A stretch of DNA of 64,000 nucleotides from Macrostomum lignano (GCA_002269645.1 NIVC01000753.1:1-64000), one strand, 5' to 3'; positions 29,992 to 54,740 are shown, counted from the stretch's first letter. Notes: generated by a model from the letters alone, not told the origin. Numbers and translations are program-made.

Positions 29992-29998
29992 TATAAAA
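29992..29998 (+). promoter_or_regulatory. Candidate TATA box for the GPCR gene
   Basis: TATAAAA in a GC-rich context about 85 bp upstream of the ATG at 30083. Confidence 0.3.
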
Positions 29999-30082
29999 AC
30001 CGATGGTTTCTGAAAGTCCCGTCCCGAATTGCGACGAAAACAGACGAGCACCACGCTGACCCGAGCGAGCCAGCAGCTCCGA

Positions 30083-31267
30083 ATGGGCAACACAACAAAT
30101 GCGCAGTGCACGGATCACTCTCTGCCGGAGTCTCCCCTAGTAGCGATCGGTTCTCTGGCTTTCTACTCCACCCTGGGCGTGCTCGGACTGTTCGGCAACA
30201 TCCACGTCATCCTCGTGTTCGCCTCCAGTCGGGAGAAGAGTCTGCGCTTCCTCATCACGGTACTGTCGGCCATGGATCTGTTTATATCGGCAGTGGTGCT
30301 GCCCACCGACTGCTACCGGGTGTACAATGACTACCTGGCCAGCAAGTACGAGCTGAAGGCCACCAATCACTGGTTCAGCACCGTGATCCTGTCGTCCAGG
30401 TATGCGGCGTTCGAGATGGAGGCCTGGATTCTGGTGTTCATCGCAGTGGACCGCTACCTGTGCATCGTGAAGGCCAGTCAGCAAGGCCTTACCTACAAGA
30501 AGACCCTCTGCGCCCTGTTCGCCGCAGCGCTGAGTCTTCTGCTCCTAGAGGTGTGCAACGTGACAAGCCACTACCTGATTGAAGACCAGTGCGGCCTGAA
30601 GCTCCAGCTGGAGTCCTACCTGCTGTACTTCTACGGCGCACTCGGCACCCTGTCAGTGCTGGTTGTCATGTCGCTTTATATCAGAATTTTCACCTTCGTG
30701 GCCTCCATGGAGAGGCGGCGCAGTTCGAAGCGCAAAGTCACCAAGCAGACGCTGGCGCTGCTGTCCAGGGCGGACGAAGTCGGCGCGACCAGCAACTGCG
30801 GGGACCTCGGCGGCGGTGGCGACGGCGCTGGTGACAAAAATCTTCAAGGTACCGCCAGCTACGCTTTGGAAACATCTTTAAAACCGACCAGCTGCTCGCT
30901 TCAGGTGACAGCCGACGGTCCAACCGGGTTTAACGGCATCTCCGAGTGTCCCAGCAGCAGCTTCGTCAGCAATGCGCTGCCGCCGCAGTCGGCGACCGCC
31001 GCCGCCGCCGCTGCCGCCGCCACCACCGAGTCATGGTTCCCCAAGAAGCTGGCCTGGATGCTGTTCGGCGCCACCGTGCTGTTCTACGGCAGCATGCTGC
31101 CGATGATCCTCATCAACTTCAAGCTGCTGCCGGACTCGCCGCTGCACCGAATTTTCTATTTGAACACGTCGCTGAACTTTTTCGTCTACGCCATGATGAA
31201 CTCGAAGTTCAGAGAGGAGCTGCGCAGAATTTACAGCAGGGCCTGCAGGTGCCGCTGCGAGCAGTGA
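30083..31267 (+). CDS. Intronless rhodopsin-like (class A) orphan GPCR, 394 aa
   Basis: Seven hydrophobic segments: TM1 GLFGN, TM2 LSAMDL, TM3 AVDRY, TM5 Y..IF, TM6 LFYGSMLP, TM7 LNTSLNFFVY, helix 8 NSKFREEL. N-terminal N-glycosylation sequon NTT. The ATG at 30083 is preferred over the GTG at 30029. Confidence 0.9.
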   Translation: MGNTTNAQCTDHSLPESPLVAIGSLAFYSTLGVLGLFGNIHVILVFASSREKSLRFLITVLSAMDLFISAVVLPTDCYRVYNDYLASKYELKATNHWFSTVILSSRYAAFEMEAWILVFIAVDRYLCIVKASQQGLTYKKTLCALFAAALSLLLLEVCNVTSHYLIEDQCGLKLQLESYLLYFYGALGTLSVLVVMSLYIRIFTFVASMERRRSSKRKVTKQTLALLSRADEVGATSNCGDLGGGGDGAGDKNLQGTASYALETSLKPTSCSLQVTADGPTGFNGISECPSSSFVSNALPPQSATAAAAAAAATTESWFPKKLAWMLFGATVLFYGSMLPMILINFKLLPDSPLHRIFYLNTSLNFFVYAMMNSKFREELRRIYSRACRCRCEQ

Positions 31268-48000: not shown

Positions 48001-48298
48001 GCAGTAGATGAATGGAATAGCCAGGTGAATATGCAGTCCAGATGAGAAGTCTTTAGAGAAACCAATTTCGAATATCTTGTTTATGAATTCTTGAAAAAAT
48101 ATCATAATTTTTTGTTGGCTCACTAATTAGAAACCATGTTTTAAATTTGTTTGAGTAAAACAGGTACAACTGTGTGTCTGCAGTGAATTTTGTTGTCAAT
48201 CTGAGCCAGCAAATATTAGTTGCTATGGAAACTGGCTATCCAACAAGCATATGGTATTGTATTATTTCAGTTAGTTAAAGCTGTAAAACACTAAAAAG

Positions 48299-48694
48299 AT
48301 GTCAGCATCAGCGGCTTCGCTGAGCAGCCAGCGCCAGCGAGTGCTCAGCCTGTACCGTCAGATCCTTCGTTTGGCCAGGCAGTGGCCTGGCCGGCCAGGC
48401 GTGGCAGACCCGGCCACGGAGGCGGCCTACATCCGGACAGAGGCTGGCACCCTGTTCCGCCAGCACAAGTCCCTGTCAGACCCGGCCGTCATCGAGTCTC
48501 ACATTGCGGAGGCGGAGTCGCGCATTAATTTGGCTCTGCACTACAATATCCCGTATCCGCGCATGCCAAATTTGCCGCCTGGTTGCTTAGCAACGCCCGG
48601 CCAGCCGAAGCGTCGGACAGCCCGCGGCATGGACGACGCCCTGCCGGCTTATATGAAGAGCTACAAATCCGGCTACGCGCCTAAGATCAAGTAG
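48299..48694 (+). CDS. LYRM1: LYR motif-containing protein 1 (Complex1_LYR family), 131 aa, single exon
   Basis: VLSLYRQILRLARQW...YIRTEAGTLFRQHK...ESRINLALHYNIPYPR..LPP matches the recalled LYRM1 pattern (LYR...F...HYxIPYPR). Confidence 0.92.
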   Translation: MSASAASLSSQRQRVLSLYRQILRLARQWPGRPGVADPATEAAYIRTEAGTLFRQHKSLSDPAVIESHIAEAESRINLALHYNIPYPRMPNLPPGCLATPGQPKRRTARGMDDALPAYMKSYKSGYAPKIK

Positions 48695-48957: not shown

Positions 48958-49660
48958 TCATCGCCCTCCATCATCACCAAGAATCGCTTTCATTCATCAT
49001 CACCAAGAATCGCCCTCCATCATCACCAAGAATCGCTTTCATTCATCATCACCAAGAATCGCCCTCCATCATCACCAAGAATCGCTTTCATTCATCATCA
49101 CCAAGAATCGCCCTCCATCATCACCAAGAATCGCCCTCCATCATCACCAATAATCGTCCTTCATCATCACCAAGAATCGCCCTCCATCATCACCAAGAAT
49201 CGCTTTCATTCATCATCACCAAGAATCGCCCTCCATCATCACCAAGAATCGCCCTCCATCATCACCAATAATCGTCCTTCATCATCACCAAGAATCGCCC
49301 TCCATCATCACCAAGAATCGCCCTCCATCATCACCAAGAATCTCCTTCCATCATCACCAAGAATCGCCCTCCATCATCACCAAGAATCGCCCTCCATCAT
49401 CACCAATAATCGCCCTTCATCACCACCAAGAATCGCCCTCCATCATCACCAATAATCGTCCTTCATCATCACCAAGAATCGCCCTCCATCATCACCAAGA
49501 ATCGCCCTCCATCATCACCAATAATCGTCCTTCATCATCACCAAGAATCGCCCTCCATCATCACCGAGAATCCCCCTTCATCATCACCACCAAGAATCGC
49601 CCTCCATCATCACCAAGAATCGCCCTCCATCATCACCAAGAATCGCCCTTCATCATCATC
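48958..49660. repeat. 23-bp minisatellite (CCATCATCACCAAGAATCGCCCT)n
   Basis: 23-bp period (49101 to 49124), about 30 copies. Confidence 0.95.
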
Positions 49661-50507
49661 TCTCCTCGAGCATTGCCATTTGTAACGAGCATTTGTAAAT
49701 TGAATAAATAAAATTGTTTGACTCTGAACCTTGTTTTTCATATTAAACAACAAATTTTCGTCTATTTTTGCTTACTTTTCTACTTGTAGTAGTATTGTAG
49801 AATCGCTTTAGGATTTTATTCGATTGCCATGTTGCTTTTTGCCTTACATTGCTTGCTATCGCGTAGTTATACAAGCTGGCCTAAGAGCCCAGTAAATATT
49901 CGGTCAACTTGTTTCAAATAAATAAACGATTTTAATAAAAAATCTGCTCTTACCAGCTCGTAGTAAAAAGGGGTATAAAGTAGGATATTGGAAATCACCT
50001 GTGTCCGTCTAGCGGGTTTGTCGAAAATGATTTATTAGTTAATATCCTCTGGCAAGTGTTGCTTTTGTGTGTTTTCCATTTCACTCTTGTTGGTTGTTCA
50101 GTTCATTTCCTGTCGCGCTTCTTCTTGGATGAGGAAGGGCAGCCGCGGCGGCTGGGAGCTATAATTAGATTACTTTGAGCGATGAAGCACCGAGCGAGCG
50201 TGCAACCTAGCCTAGCTCGGGTCTGTTTATGTGGGCTGACAAATGCTTTTTGCTTAATAACATTCGCTTGCGTAAGCGGAATTTTCTTGTTTTTTTTCTT
50301 GTGCAAAAAAATGTAACTTTAAAAAACAGGGCGATTTTTTGCGCAAAAAAGTTCGCTAGGGCTTCTAAGAGATGTTTCTTTAGCTTTTCTAGGCTTTCTT
50401 AGCTGATTCTTTGCGGTTTTGAACGCGTCCGATTCTTGCATTAGGGTTCTCTCGGGTTCGATTCCTGCCGCGTGCTCAGGGTCAGCGGAATGGGCCCGAC
50501 TGCAACT

Positions 50508-50532
50508 GATTAACTAACTAACTGACTGACTG

Positions 50533-50563
<31 letters not shown>

Positions 50564-50716
50564 GACTGACTGACTAACTAACTGACTAACTAACTGAATA
50601 ACTAACTAACTAACTGACTAACTAACTAATTAACTAACTGACTAACTAACTGACTAACTAACTGACTAACTAACTAACTAACTAACTAACTGACTAACTA
50701 ACTAACTAACTAACTG

Positions 50717-50747
<31 letters not shown>

Positions 50748-50748
50748 G

Positions 50749-50781
<33 letters not shown>

Positions 50782-50802
50782 ATGACTAACTAATTAACTA
50801 AA

Positions 50803-50853
<51 letters not shown>

Positions 50854-50876
50854 TTGACTAACTAACTAACTGACTG

Positions 50877-50919
<43 letters not shown>

Positions 50920-50944
50920 GACTAACTAACTAACTAACTAACTG

Positions 50945-50999
<55 letters not shown>

Positions 51000-51052
51000 G
51001 ACTAACTAACTAACTAACTGACTGACTAACTAACTAACTAACTAACTAACTG

Positions 51053-51091
<39 letters not shown>

Positions 51092-51156
51092 GAATAACTA
51101 ACTAACTAACTGACTAACTAACTAACTTACTAACTAACTAACTAACTAACTAACTT

Positions 51157-51187
<31 letters not shown>

Positions 51188-51188
51188 G

Positions 51189-51219
<31 letters not shown>

Positions 51220-51310
51220 GACTAACTAACTAACTAACTAACTGAATAACAAACTAACTGACTAACTAACTAACTAACTAACTAACTGACTGACTAACTA
51301 ATTAACTAAA

Positions 51311-51361
<51 letters not shown>

Positions 51362-51388
51362 ATGACTAACTAACTAACTAACTGACTG

Positions 51389-51423
<35 letters not shown>

Positions 51424-51524
51424 GACTAACTAACTAACTAACTAACTGACTAACTAACTAACTAACTAACTTACTAACTAACTAACTAACTAACTAACTG
51501 ACTAACTAACTAACTAACTGACTG

Positions 51525-51559
<35 letters not shown>

Positions 51560-51560
51560 G

Positions 51561-51595
<35 letters not shown>

Positions 51596-51620
51596 GAATA
51601 ACTAACTAACTAACTAACTG

Positions 51621-51679
<59 letters not shown>

Positions 51680-51680
51680 G

Positions 51681-51739
<59 letters not shown>

Positions 51740-51812
51740 GACTAACTAACTAACTAACTAACTGACTAACTAACTAACTAACTAACTGAATAACTAACTA
51801 ACTGACTAACTG

Positions 51813-51859
<47 letters not shown>

Positions 51860-51860
51860 G

Positions 51861-51899
<39 letters not shown>

Positions 51900-51952
51900 G
51901 ACTAACTAACTAACTAACTAACTGACTAACTAACTAACTAACTAACTAACTG

Positions 51953-51987
<35 letters not shown>

Positions 51988-52056
51988 GACTAACTAACTA
52001 ACTAACTAACTAACTGACTAACTAACTAACTAACTAACTGACTAACTAACTAACTG

Positions 52057-52087
<31 letters not shown>

Positions 52088-52140
52088 GACTAACTAACTA
52101 ACTAACTAACTAACTGACTAACTAACTAACTAACTAACTG

Positions 52141-52185
<45 letters not shown>

Positions 52186-52208
52186 ATAACTAACTAACTA
52201 ACTAACTG

Positions 52209-52239
<31 letters not shown>

Positions 52240-52288
52240 GACTAACTAACTAACTAACTAACTGAATAACTAACTAACTGACTAACTG

Positions 52289-52327
<39 letters not shown>

Positions 52328-52328
52328 G

Positions 52329-52359
<31 letters not shown>

Positions 52360-52412
52360 GACTAACTATCTAACTAACTAACTGACTAACTAACTAACTA
52401 ACTAACTAACTG

Positions 52413-52455
<43 letters not shown>

Positions 52456-52536
52456 GAATAACTAACTAACTGACTAACTGACTAACTGAATAACTAACTG
52501 ACTAACTAACTAACTGAATAACTAACTGACTAACTA
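50508..52536. repeat. (CTAA)n / (TAAC)n microsatellite with CTGA variants, ~2 kb
   Basis: Directly visible. Confidence 0.98.
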
Positions 52537-52539
52537 AAA

Positions 52540-52630
52540 AACTAGCTGAGTGACCAACTGTGGCCACGGTGCGGAATCGAACCTGGGAGCCCTGACGCAA
52601 CGGTCTATACGCGCTACCACCCCAGTCCTC
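52540..52630 (-). mobile_element. tRNA-like SINE head (a second B box on the plus strand at 50455-50465)
   Basis: B box GGTTCGATTCC at 52583-52573 with an upstream degenerate A box; resembles the head at 41625-41690. Confidence 0.5.
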
Positions 52631-52643
52631 TTAGTTTCTACAG

Positions 52644-53030
52644 CAAGCGCACATCGCACTTCTGGCATTCCAGTCGCAATCCGGGCAGACGCACCAGCCG
52701 GACGAAGCCGCGAACTGGGAGGCGGTGGACGAGCGGCTGCTGCACGTCGAGCACGGCGGCCTGCTGCTGGCCGGCGGCGGCGGCTGCCGCGTCTCCGGCC
52801 TCGACTCGGCGGCGCCGCGGCTTCAACAGGGCCGGCTGGATCTGCGCGGCCGCTACAAAGACGCCGCTGGCACCGTGATGTACTTTGAGCTGTTGGACGC
52901 CGGGGAAGGCGCCGCCGGTCCAACATGTCGGCTGGTTGGCCAGACGGAGAAGCTGCTGCTGGTGGAGCCGCCTATGCAGAGCAAATCAGTGCTGGGCAGG
53001 ACGGCAGCTCGCGATAAGGCGGCCAACTGA
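52644..53030 (+). CDS. GTF3C6: General transcription factor IIIC subunit 6 (TFIIIC35-like), coding exon with no ATG before the conserved domain
   Basis: RLLHVEHGGLL...CRVSGLDSAAPRLQQG...GRYKDAAGTVMYFE...QTEKLL aligns with recalled human QLVLVELSGII...CKVLGIDTERPILQVD...GEYEDTLGTCVIFE...HTMKKL. There are phase-0 acceptors at 52643 and 52673. Confidence 0.78.
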   Translation, partial: QAHIALLAFQSQSGQTHQPDEAANWEAVDERLLHVEHGGLLLAGGGGCRVSGLDSAAPRLQQGRLDLRGRYKDAAGTVMYFELLDAGEGAAGPTCRLVGQTEKLLLVEPPMQSKSVLGRTAARDKAAN

Positions 53031-53099
53031 TGAATTCAAAGAGTATTTATAAGAGTATTTGGTGGGAAAATTGCTAAGGGCAAGTAGATTTTCCATTGA

Positions 53100-53390
53100 A
53101 TGGTTGGGGAGAATTTTCCCATAGATTAATTGGGGAGATTTTTCCCATAGACTAATTAGGGAGATTTTTTCTCATAGACTAATTAGGGAGATTTTTTCTC
53201 ATAGACTAATTAGGGAGATTTTTGCCATTGACTAGTTAGGGAGATTTTTCCCATAGACTAATTAGGGAGACTTTTGCCATTGACTAGTTGGGGAGATTTT
53301 TCCATTGACTTATTGAGGATATTTTTGCCCTTTGACTAATTAGGAAGATTTTCCCATTGACTGGTTGGGTAGGTTTTTCCCATAGACGGG
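53100..53390. repeat. Degenerate ~27-bp repeat (GGGAGATTTTTCCCATAGACTAATTA)
   Basis: About 10 visible copies 3' of GTF3C6. Confidence 0.8.
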
Positions 53391-53799: not shown

Positions 53800-54740
53800 G
53801 AGATTCGCTTCCGAATCCGCCCCTCCAAAATCACATCTAAATCCGCCCCCCTCCCAAAAATCGCATCCAAATCTGCCCCCTCTAAAAAATCGCATCCAAA
53901 TCCGCCCCTTCCAAAAATCGCATCTAAATCCGCCCCCTTCCAAAAATCGCATCCAAATCCGCCCCCTCCCAAAAATTGCATCTAAATCCGCCCCTCTCAA
54001 AAATCGCATCTAAATCCGCCCCTCCCGAAAATTGCATCAAAATCCGCCCCCCTCCAAAATCGCATCCGAATCGATCCGCCCCCTCCCAAAAATCGCATCT
54101 TAATCCGCCCCCCTCTCAAAAATCACATCTAAATCCACCCCCTCCCAAAAATCGAATCAAAATCCGCCCCCTCCCAAAAATCGCATCCAAATCCGCCCCT
54201 CTCAAAAATCGTATCTAAATCCGCCCTCTCTCAAGAATCGCATCCAAATCCGCCCCTCTCAAAAATCGCATCCAAATCCGCCCCCTCCCAAAAATCGCAT
54301 CCAAATCCGCTATCTCCCAAAAATCGCATCCAAATCCGCCCCCTCCCAAAAATCGAATCAAAATCCGCCCCTCCCAAAAATCGCATCCAAATCCGCCCCT
54401 CTCAAAAATCGTATCTAAATCCGCCCTCTCTCAAGAATCGCATCCAAATCCGCCCCCTCCAAAAAATCGCATCCAAATCCGCTATCTCCCAAAAATCGCA
54501 CTCAAATCCGCCCCTCCCAAAAATCGCATCCAAATCCGCCCCCTCTCAAGAATCGCATTCAAATCCGCCGCCTCTCAAAAATCGCATCTAAATCCGCCCT
54601 CTCAAAAATCGCATCCAAATCCGCCCTCTCCCAAAAATCGCATCCAAATCCGCCCCCTCCCAAAAATCGCATCCAAATCCGCCCCCTCCCAAAAATCGCA
54701 TCCAAATCCGCCCCCTCCCCCAAAATCGTTCGCGAACCCG
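53800..54740. repeat. ~29-bp minisatellite (AAAAATCGCATCCAAATCCGCCCCCTCCC)n
   Basis: 29-bp period (54641 to 54670). Confidence 0.93.

What the first reader, a model, noticed from the sequence alone, without database searches (positions are those of the whole stretch)
52620..53030. GTF3C6 has no own start codon: the ATG may come from the spliced leader
Seen: the GTF3C6 frame has no ATG before its conserved domain (first in-frame ATG is in GTVMYFE). It opens in phase 0 directly after two good acceptors, TTTCTACAG| (52643) and CATTCCAG| (52673). Known: flatworm spliced-leader RNAs end in a conserved AUG that can act as the initiator. Inference: SL + 52674 gives MSQSGQTHQPDEAANWEAVDERLLHVE, an N-terminus of about the right length for GTF3C6. 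Alternative: cis-splicing from an in-frame ATG-containing segment at 50182-50271 (GTAAGC donor), which would add a non-conserved hydrophobic leader.
Basis: partly seen in the sequence, partly recalled or inferred. Interest (0 to 1): 0.75.

Follow-up and report, generated by a model that had tools for sequence, protein, structure and literature searches.

The report
Flatworm GTF3C6 gene without own ATG
A small, conserved RNA polymerase III factor gene (GTF3C6) of the flatworm Macrostomum lignano has no start codon of its own and most likely borrows the AUG at the end of the trans-spliced leader, a mechanism already known in flatworms; this is inferred from sequence, because no transcript data could be checked here.

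Summary
The window is Macrostomum lignano contig NIVC01000753.1. A 118-codon reading frame (52674-53030) encodes the whole GTF3C6/TFIIIC triple-barrel domain. An in-frame TAG at 52632 closes it upstream, and its first ATG (52878) lies inside the domain.

Evidence that the gene is real and under constraint:
- All three assembly copies are identical over 394 nt here, whereas unique flanks vary about once per 24 nt.
- So the missing ATG is neither an assembly error nor decay.

Evidence for a leader-donated start:
- The published M. lignano leader ends in ...TTGCATG.
So are weaker AGs giving exon starts 52635 and 52689.
- GenBank annotates the gene as 5'-partial without Met on two copies, one starting at the equivalent of 52689, and not at all on this contig.
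- A same-strand LYRM gene 4 kb upstream, separated mostly by microsatellite, fits a repeat-expanded operon.

The only cis alternative, exon 50182-50271 with a GTAAGC donor, has poor codon usage and no model uses it.

No RNA evidence was reachable, so leader-AUG initiation is the best-supported inference (about 0.6). It would be a new instance of a known mechanism (Cheng et al. 2006), of modest interest.

The parts
52632..52634 (+). In-frame TAG that closes the GTF3C6 frame upstream. Its AG is itself a possible phase-0 acceptor (exon start 52635).
52635..52643 (+). Acceptor 1, TTTCTACAG|. Exon start 52644, phase 0, fits [T/C]TNCAG, 75% pyrimidines in the 20 nt upstream. Leader + exon would give MQAHIALLAFQSQSGQ...
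   Evidence: Motif from PMC8629364. The chimeric ML2 gene model P0006 also enters the exon here.
52666..52673 (+). Acceptor 2, CATTCCAG|. Exon start 52674, phase 0, fits [T/C]TNCAG. Leader + exon would give MSQSGQTHQPDEAANW... Position 52666 (-8) is the only variable site near the ORF: C>A in copy L002, which would change Ala to Glu if it were coding.
52683..52688 (+). Acceptor 3, GGGCAG|. Exon start 52689, phase 0, weak pyrimidine tract, does not fit the motif. The GenBank 5'-partial CDS on NIVC01000214.1 starts exactly here (THQPDEAANW...).
52674..53030 (+). GTF3C6 (TFIIIC subunit 6) coding exon: 118 codons plus TGA, a single exon with no initiator ATG. GC3 is 0.83. It is 100% identical in the three assembly copies.
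52716..52958 (+). Conserved triple-barrel core, from the invariant Trp (WEAVDERLL) to the invariant Leu near the end of the domain.
   Evidence: (invariant columns W25 to L105 of the 128-aa translation starting at 52644)
52878..52880 (+). First genomic in-frame ATG (GTVMYFE). Starting here would leave only 50 residues and lose more than half of the domain.
50182..50277 (+). Rival cis exon: ATG...TGC (30 codons, MKHRASVQPSLARVCLCGLTNAFCLITFAC) plus the donor GTAAGC at 50272-50277. GC3 is 0.47. A TATAAT at 50160-50165 lies only 22 nt upstream of the ATG.
48299..48694 (+). Upstream same-strand LYR-motif (Complex1_LYR) gene with its own ATG. Possible first cistron of a repeat-expanded operon with GTF3C6.
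50504..52544 (.). (AACT)n microsatellite of 2 kb that fills most of the LYRM-GTF3C6 spacer. Its length differs between the three copies.
52562..52644 (-). Degenerate tRNA-like relic antisense to the gene. Its complement supplies the pyrimidine tract and AG of acceptor 1. It contains a perfect B-box-like GGTTCGATTCC (52573-52583, minus strand).
   Evidence: no tRNA at normal thresholds; ARAGORN only at the 60% threshold

Best explanation
The locus is the functional GTF3C6 (TFIIIC 35-kDa-type subunit) gene of Macrostomum lignano, carried on one coding exon that has no initiator codon in the genome.

Proposed mechanism:
- The pre-mRNA is either the downstream part of a LYRM-GTF3C6 polycistronic transcript or an independent transcript with an outron.
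- It is trans-spliced to the 35-nt spliced leader CGGTCTCTTACTGCGAAGACTCAATTTATTGCATG at one or more of the phase-0 acceptors just upstream of the conserved domain. The consensus sites give exon starts 52644 and 52674. Exon start 52689 is possible.
- The leader's 3'-terminal AUG then becomes the first and in-frame AUG of the mRNA and starts translation. The result is a protein of about 114-129 residues with 10-25 residues ahead of the conserved Trp.

Shown here: the species; the ATG-less but constrained ORF; the acceptor motifs and their phase; the leader sequence (from the literature); and the absence of a credible genomic ATG exon in existing models.

Inferred: that this gene is actually trans-spliced, which acceptor is used, and that ribosomes start at the leader AUG.
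For: - Species and leader: the window is M. lignano NIVC01000753.1. Its single leader ends in ATG, about 30% of genes and 45% of human-conserved genes are trans-spliced, and the acceptor motif is [T/C]TNCAG (PMC8629364).
- Need for an external AUG: there is an in-frame stop at 52632, no ATG in any frame until 52878, and that ATG lies inside the domain.
- The gene is real and constrained: family hits. There are 0 variable columns over 394 nt (52667-53060) in three copies, against 25 variable columns in 599 nt of unique spacer. No other GTF3C6-like M. lignano protein appeared in two database-wide searches.
- Acceptors: exon starts 52644 and 52674 fit the motif, and all four plausible AGs (exon starts 52635, 52644, 52674, 52689) are phase 0.
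- Existing models: GenBank CDSs on the two other copies are Met-less 5'-partial single exons, one beginning directly after CAG at the equivalent of 52689. That annotation pipeline trimmed the leader and cut transcripts at leader peaks (PMC5730564).
- N-terminal length: fish orthologues place Met only 4 residues before the conserved Trp, so nothing but a Met is missing.
- Operon context: the same-strand LYRM gene lies upstream in all three copies. The spacer is about 0.9-1.0 kb after the tandem repeats are subtracted, near the published <1 kb operon criterion.
- Precedent: leader-AUG initiation is documented in flatworms and noted for Macrostomum.
Against: - No transcript, RACE, Ribo-seq or peptide evidence could be consulted.
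- The three copies are annotated inconsistently: no CDS on this contig, and starts at 52689 and 52713 on the others. The 52713 start does not follow an AG. The annotated 5' ends may therefore be ragged assembly ends rather than leader sites, possibly because reads multi-map among identical copies.
- An in-frame ATG exon with a consensus donor does exist 2.4 kb upstream and is invariant in the three copies.
- The phase-0 coincidence is not statistically strong.
- The poly(A) site of LYRM, and hence the operon spacing, is inferred from AATAAA motifs only.
Confidence: 0.6

Rival explanations
1. Conventional cis-splicing. Transcription starts upstream of 50182, and the exon 50182-50271 (ATG, 30 codons) is spliced from its GTAAGC donor to the acceptor at 52643 or 52673. 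This adds a hydrophobic, non-conserved 30-residue leader to GTF3C6.
For: It is the only ATG-open segment with a GT[AG]AG donor in phase 0 in the 3.9 kb spacer. The exon and donor are identical in all three copies, inside a 103-nt invariant run. The resulting 2.4-kb intron would be ordinary for this genome (PMC5730564). Flatworm acceptors are often shared between cis- and trans-splicing (PMC12582326).
Against: - GC3 is 0.47, against 0.83 for the ORF and 0.75 for LYRM.
- The peptide is Cys/Leu-rich and hydrophobic, with no counterpart in orthologues.
- No GenBank model and not even the chimeric ML2 model uses it.
- The invariant run is not significant. A 91-nt run occurs nearby, and the chance of one such run among about 25 intervals is roughly 0.3.
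- The only TATA-like box (50160) sits 22 nt before the ATG. A TATA-directed start would therefore fall at or after the ATG, leaving only out-of-frame ATGs (50229, 50243).
Confidence: 0.12
2. No leader and no upstream exon. The transcript starts in or near the tRNA-like relic and is translated from a non-AUG codon (for example CTG 52662) or from the internal Met 52878. Alternatively, the locus is a poorly expressed or decaying copy that makes no full-length protein.
For: This contig has no annotated CDS at all, and the other two have ragged Met-less starts. That pattern could reflect low expression. The family scores are borderline (23.9 against 22.7 bits).
Against: The frame is intact and has zero substitutions over 394 nt in three copies whose unique flanks differ by 2-7%. 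It is the only GTF3C6 homologue found for the species. Starting at Met 52878 removes the N-terminal half of the barrel, including 14 of the 21 invariant columns. Near-cognate initiation is rare and the CTG context is poor.
Confidence: 0.13
3. An ATG exon lies further away or is missing from the assembly, for example upstream of LYRM or in a collapsed repeat.
For: The region is extremely repeat-rich and the three copies differ by kilobases in repeat length.
Against: The three copies are collinear, with the same unique blocks. The (AACT)n array has stops in every frame and no ATG. The orthologues need no extra N-terminal sequence.
Confidence: 0.05

Closest known systems
[quoted passage not shown]
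   Same: The leader ends in AUG, the acceptor is in frame, and the recipient ORF lacks its own initiator upstream of the conserved region. [quoted passage not shown]
   Different: The species differs (free-living Macrostomorpha, not a parasite), as does the gene. Here the trans-splicing event itself is inferred, not observed.
M. lignano SL trans-splicing and repeat-expanded operons (Wudarski et al. 2017, PMC5730564; Ustyantsev & Berezikov 2021, PMC8629364)
   Same: The leader sequence and the [T/C]TNCAG acceptor motif are the same. A conserved housekeeping gene lies downstream of a same-strand gene, with a spacer made mostly of simple repeats.
   Different: Whether this pair is annotated as one transcriptional unit could not be read, because names are masked for window-encoded proteins. 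The repeat-adjusted spacer (about 0.9-1.0 kb) sits at the edge of their <1 kb criterion, far from the 100-bp mode.
slORFs: reading frames created by the spliced leader (slORFfinder, PMC9851317)
   Same: A start codon is supplied in trans by the leader.
   Different: Those cases were defined by ribosome footprints in nematodes, Oikopleura and trypanosomes, mostly with near-cognate codons. No flatworm Ribo-seq was available there or here.
GTF3C6 / TFIIIC35 family (Pfam PF10419; human GTF3C6 in PDB 8clk chain F)
   Same: The same domain is covered end to end. The W-E-x-x-[DE]-E-x-L start, GLDS..P..Q.G, G.Y.DA.GT..F and T.K.L motifs are conserved.
   Different: It is very divergent (about 30-38% identity to the closest hits). 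It is short (118 aa), with no acidic C-terminal tail, and single-exon.
Yeast TFC6 promoter ETC6 site: TFIIIC autoregulates one of its own subunit genes (Kleinschmidt et al. 2011, discussed in PMC3334521)
   Same: A B-box-like element sits immediately upstream of a TFIIIC subunit gene.
   Different: Here this is only a sequence resemblance inside a tRNA-like relic. The key B-box C is mutated in one of the three copies, and no binding data exist.

Membership tests
GTF3C6 / TFIIIC_sub6 (PF10419) | Significant match to the family profile over most of the domain | tested here: met
   23.9 bits against a gathering cut-off of 22.7, profile positions 28-91 of 98. The margin is small. The N-terminal strand is matched separately by pairwise alignments.
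GTF3C6 / TFIIIC_sub6 (PF10419) | Best database hits are named GTF3C6 proteins, and motifs are conserved | tested here: met
   fish GTF3C6 (XP_053742861.1 and others) at E about 1e-4 to 6e-4 against 1.84 billion proteins; human GTF3C6 8clk_F; 21 invariant columns.
GTF3C6 / TFIIIC_sub6 (PF10419) | Forms the triple-barrel heterodimer within TFIIIC | not testable with these tools
   No complex prediction or biochemistry was attempted.
mRNAs that take their initiator AUG from the flatworm spliced leader (Cheng et al. 2006 class) | The species' leader ends in AUG | tested here: met
   Literature...TTGCATG followed by GTAAG in the SL RNA gene (PMC8629364). The ATG is noted as a likely start codon in Macrostomum (PMC10468722).
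mRNAs that take their initiator AUG from the flatworm spliced leader (Cheng et al. 2006 class) | Consensus acceptor in phase 0 directly upstream of the ORF | tested here: met
   exon starts 52644 and 52674 fit [T/C]TNCAG, both phase 0.
mRNAs that take their initiator AUG from the flatworm spliced leader (Cheng et al. 2006 class) | No genomic in-frame AUG upstream of the conserved region in the mature mRNA | tested here: inconclusive
   This is true for the exon itself. One possible cis exon with an ATG (50182-50271) cannot be excluded without transcripts.
mRNAs that take their initiator AUG from the flatworm spliced leader (Cheng et al. 2006 class) | Leader actually joined to this mRNA | not testable with these tools
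   No read-level data were available. No leader-started protein for this gene is in the 15-billion-protein collection. GenBank 5'-partial starts are suggestive at 52689 only.
mRNAs that take their initiator AUG from the flatworm spliced leader (Cheng et al. 2006 class) | Translation starts at the leader AUG | not testable with these tools
   This needs Ribo-seq, N-terminal proteomics or a reporter.
M. lignano operon (Ustyantsev & Berezikov 2021 criteria) | Adjacent same-strand genes with a repeat-adjusted spacer under 1 kb | tested here: inconclusive
   From the LYRM AATAAA (49703-49712) to 52643 is about 2.9 kb. Subtracting the 2,041-nt (AACT)n array leaves about 0.87 kb. The poly(A) site is inferred, and no RepeatMasker track was available.
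M. lignano operon (Ustyantsev & Berezikov 2021 criteria) | Downstream gene is SL trans-spliced | not testable with these tools
   As above.

The most novel reading that the evidence does not exclude
GTF3C6 production in M. lignano depends on trans-splicing for its start codon. In addition, the acceptor and outron are built from an antisense tRNA-derived relic whose intact B-box-like GGTTCGATTCC (52573-52583, minus strand) binds TFIIIC itself. That would give the TFIIIC subunit gene an autoregulatory extra-TFIIIC site, analogous to yeast ETC6 upstream of TFC6.
Probability: 0.04. Interest if true: 0.6.

Novelty: new member of a known kind. Interest (0 to 1): 0.3.

Why it matters
If confirmed, this is a clean example, in a transgenic-capable free-living flatworm, of an essential housekeeping gene that cannot be translated correctly without the leader's AUG. 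The practical consequence concerns annotation. Pipelines that trim the whole leader, as was done for Mlig_3_7, turn such genes into 'partial' proteins or drop them. Here that gave 105 aa, 113 aa and nothing for three identical copies. Re-attaching the ATG at in-frame leader sites would repair an unknown number of gene models. It adds no new principle beyond Cheng et al. 2006.

Tried and rejected
- tRNA, Rfam and SL RNA searches of the window: no tRNA or RNA family at the gathering threshold, and only noise at E<=10 in 49660-52700. No copy of the leader is present in the window. The ATG is therefore not supplied by a nearby leader-like exon.
- Candidate exon 50176-50300 as a small RNA gene (TATA-like box, GTAAG, U-run): the fold z-score is -0.87 and there is no family match, so this was rejected.
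- Inverted-repeat or transposon explanation for the two tRNA-like pieces flanking (AACT)n: they share only 17 nt.
- Leader-started versions of the protein (MSQSGQ..., MQAHIALL...), Met-less versions and the internal-Met version: none is in the protein collection. Only the two GenBank partials exist.
- Locus tags and transcriptional-unit membership: names are masked for window-encoded proteins. Supplements of PMC5816591, PMC5730564 and PMC8629364 and a full-text search for Mlig025865, Mlig016337 and GTF3C6 gave nothing. A homology search with the ASNSD1 part of P0006, meant to read the neighbour's locus tag, returned no hit, so that search was wasted.
- The 'NKKEYK' mini-exon that the chimeric ML2 model P0006 places before QAHIALL could not be located in the window. 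It was treated as a prediction artefact.
- Conservation of the cis exon as evidence for coding: not significant.
- Structure prediction was not run. The domain is a heterodimeric barrel and the alignment is only 5 sequences deep.

Full report
**What is there.** The window is positions 1-64000 of Macrostomum lignano contig NIVC01000753.1 (assembly GCA_002269645.1, Mlig_3_7). The LYR-motif protein encoded at 48299-48694 matches the collection exactly and sits on that contig at the same coordinates. Near-identical GenBank proteins are named BOX15_Mlig025865g1 and BOX15_Mlig016337g1. The finding's frame reads *FLQQAHIALLAFQSQSGQTHQPDEAANWEAVDERLLHVEHGG...GTVMYFE...DKAAN*. The in-frame stop is TAG 52632-52634, the first in-frame ATG is 52878-52880, and the stop is TGA 53028-53030. 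No ATG occurs in any frame between 52635 and 52877.

**Is it GTF3C6, and is it a live gene?**
- Pfam TFIIIC_sub6 is hit just above its curated cut-off (23.9 against 22.7 bits).
- An exhaustive phmmer scan of 1.84 billion representatives finds only the species' own protein plus three weak relatives (E 1e-4 to 6e-4). Two are fish proteins named GTF3C6 or TFIIIC triple-barrel, and one is from an invertebrate transcriptome contig.
- The PDB search finds human GTF3C6 (8clk_F, E = 0.04).
- In the alignment, 21 columns are invariant, running from the Trp of WEAVDERLL (52716) to a Leu at 52956. The single exon therefore covers the whole domain.
- Fish orthologues begin M-x-D-E-W, only four residues before that Trp. 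Nothing except a Met is missing from the flatworm frame.
- Two further copies of the locus exist in the assembly: L001 = NIVC01001844.1 and L002 = NIVC01000214.1.
- From 52667 to 53060 (394 nt) the three copies show no difference. The unique spacer 49905-50503 has 25 variable columns in 599 nt, and the flanks differ by 2-7%.
- That excludes an assembly error as the cause of the missing ATG. It also argues for purifying selection (or recent conversion), not decay.
- No second GTF3C6-like M. lignano protein turned up.

**The leader and the acceptors.**
- M. lignano has one 35-nt spliced leader, CGGTCTCTTACTGCGAAGACTCAATTTATTGCATG, followed by GTAAG in the SL RNA gene.
- About 30% of all genes, and 45% of genes with a human homologue, are trans-spliced. 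The enriched acceptor motif is [T/C]TNCAG (PMC8629364).
- Among the nine AGs that give exon starts from 52635 to 52734, exactly two fit that motif. Both are phase 0, with 70-75% pyrimidines upstream.
- Two more phase-0 AGs exist: TCTTAG| (exon start 52635, formed by the stop codon itself) and GGGCAG| (exon start 52689).
- Leader joined at any of the four sites puts its AUG in frame and makes it the first AUG of the mRNA.
- The phase coincidence is weak statistically: 3 of the 4 AGs upstream of 52675 are phase 0 (P about 0.11), and CAG/GAG codons inflate phase-0 AGs inside the ORF.
- The one polymorphism near the ORF, C>A at 52666 in L002, would be Ala>Glu if coding. It lies between acceptors 1 and 2. 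This is a hint, no more, that constraint begins at or after 52667.

**What existing annotations say.**
- GenBank has a 105-aa protein on L001 starting NWEAV (equivalent to 52713). It has a 113-aa protein on L002 starting THQPDE (equivalent to 52689, the base after GGGCAG). It has no CDS on the window's own contig.
- Both proteins are Met-less single-exon models, so the underlying transcripts begin inside the frame with no upstream exon.
- The annotation pipeline trimmed leaders, cut transcriptional units at leader peaks and called ORFs with TransDecoder (PMC5730564). That procedure would yield exactly such '5'-partial' proteins for genes that start with the leader's AUG.
- The three identical copies nevertheless have three different outcomes, and 52713 does not follow an AG. 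These ends cannot be taken as proof of a leader site. Multi-mapping among identical copies is a plausible cause.
- A control in the same window shows that 5'-partial calls also arise without trans-splicing. The GPCR model P0003 starts Met-less about 40 nt after a TATAAAA box (29993) and has its real ATG 16 codons further on.
- The older ML2/UniProt model A0A1I8I6H6 (P0006) is a chimera of GPCR, LYRM, GTF3C6 and ASNSD1. It enters the GTF3C6 exon at QAHIALL, that is at acceptor 52644.

**The cis-splicing rival.**
- Between the LYRM stop and the ORF there is only one consensus donor preceded by an open ATG.
- It is identical in the three copies. However, the 103-nt invariant run is not unusual for this spacer, where a 91-nt run lies nearby.
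- Its GC3 is 0.47, against 0.83 for the ORF and 0.75 for LYRM.
- Its product is a hydrophobic, Cys-rich 30-mer with no counterpart in orthologues, and no model uses it.
- The only TATA-like box (50160-50165) is 22 nt upstream of the ATG. A TATA-directed start would fall at or past the ATG and would leave only out-of-frame ATGs in that exon (read).
- I give this rival about 0.12.

**Operon context.**
- LYRM lies on the same strand upstream in all three copies, at spacings of 2.9 to 5.2 kb between gene starts.
- In the window the spacer holds a 23-bp minisatellite (48960-49658), AATAAA motifs at 49703-49712 and a 2,041-nt (AACT)n array (50504-52544).
- From the inferred LYRM poly(A) site to acceptor 1, about 0.87 kb remains after the array is removed. 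This is just inside the repeat-adjusted <1 kb operon criterion of Ustyantsev & Berezikov.
- A LYRM-GTF3C6 operon is therefore plausible but unproven.

**Comparison with what is known.** Use of the flatworm leader's terminal AUG as initiator was shown for Schistosoma mansoni. There it is in frame in 28% of trans-spliced mRNAs and required by more than 40 cDNAs (Cheng et al. 2006, as summarised in PMC9851317). All reported flatworm leaders keep the AUG (PMC12582326). Wiberg et al. kept the ATG untrimmed in Macrostomum precisely because it is a likely start codon (PMC10468722). The present case would be one more member of that class, in a different flatworm lineage and for a Pol III factor gene.

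**Verdict.**
- Rivals: the cis exon (0.12), no full-length translation or non-AUG initiation (0.13), and an unseen exon (0.05).
- Novelty is low (new member of a known kind) and interest is about 0.3.
- The decisive test is a simple search of existing RNA-seq for leader-exon and exon-exon junction strings, listed under next steps.

Noticed in passing
window 52562-52644 (-), 50449-50465 (+): There are tRNA-like relics on both sides of the (AACT)n array. The right one is antisense to GTF3C6, is seen by ARAGORN only at a 60% threshold, and carries a perfect B-box-like GGTTCGATTCC at 52573-52583. It supplies the pyrimidine tract of acceptor 1. A B-box next to a TFIIIC subunit gene recalls yeast ETC6/TFC6, but the key C is mutated in copy L001.
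   Followed up: partly
window 48260-48301: The LYRM gene has a consensus acceptor TTTCAG| (AG 48269-48270) 28 nt before its own ATG (48299). If the leader is added there, the leader AUG opens an 8-codon frame (MLVKAVKH) ending at TAA 48292-48294, 4 nt before the real ATG. That would be the opposite situation to GTF3C6, with the leader AUG acting as a mini-uORF.
   Followed up: no
window 30029-31267 and 29993-30000: The GPCR gene is annotated in GenBank as Met-less (P0003 starts KQTSTT), although a TATAAAA box lies about 40 nt upstream and an in-frame ATG (RMGNTT) lies 16 codons downstream. This is a longest-ORF artefact, and it shows that '5'-partial' calls in this annotation are not by themselves evidence of a leader start.
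   Followed up: partly
UniProt A0A1I8I6H6 (P0006), spanning window ~24000-60000: The ML2-assembly gene model is a 1,366-aa chimera. It joins a repeat-derived start, the GPCR, antisense-looking filler, LYRM, GTF3C6 and ASNSD1 into one protein. Its presence also merged unrelated proteins into one 90% cluster.
   Followed up: partly
window 52674-53030 on NIVC01000753.1: The window's own contig has no annotated CDS for GTF3C6, although the ORF is identical to the two annotated copies. Three identical copies received three different annotations.
   Followed up: yes
window 48960-49658, 50504-52544, 53107-53387, 53805-54500 and many others (13.5-15 kb, 19-24.5 kb, 55-60 kb): The density of micro- and minisatellites between and inside genes is extreme: a 23-bp unit, (AACT)n of 2 kb, and 26-bp and 29-bp units. 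Array lengths differ by kilobases between the three copies while the unique blocks stay collinear.
   Followed up: partly
L003 (Logan SRR6291255_10558) 1-300: The closest invertebrate GTF3C6-like transcript has an upstream 97-codon ORF overlapping its ATG. It also has an acceptor-like TTCCCAG| 11 nt before that ATG, so it may be an unprocessed polycistronic RNA from another trans-splicing animal. The organism was not identified.
   Followed up: no
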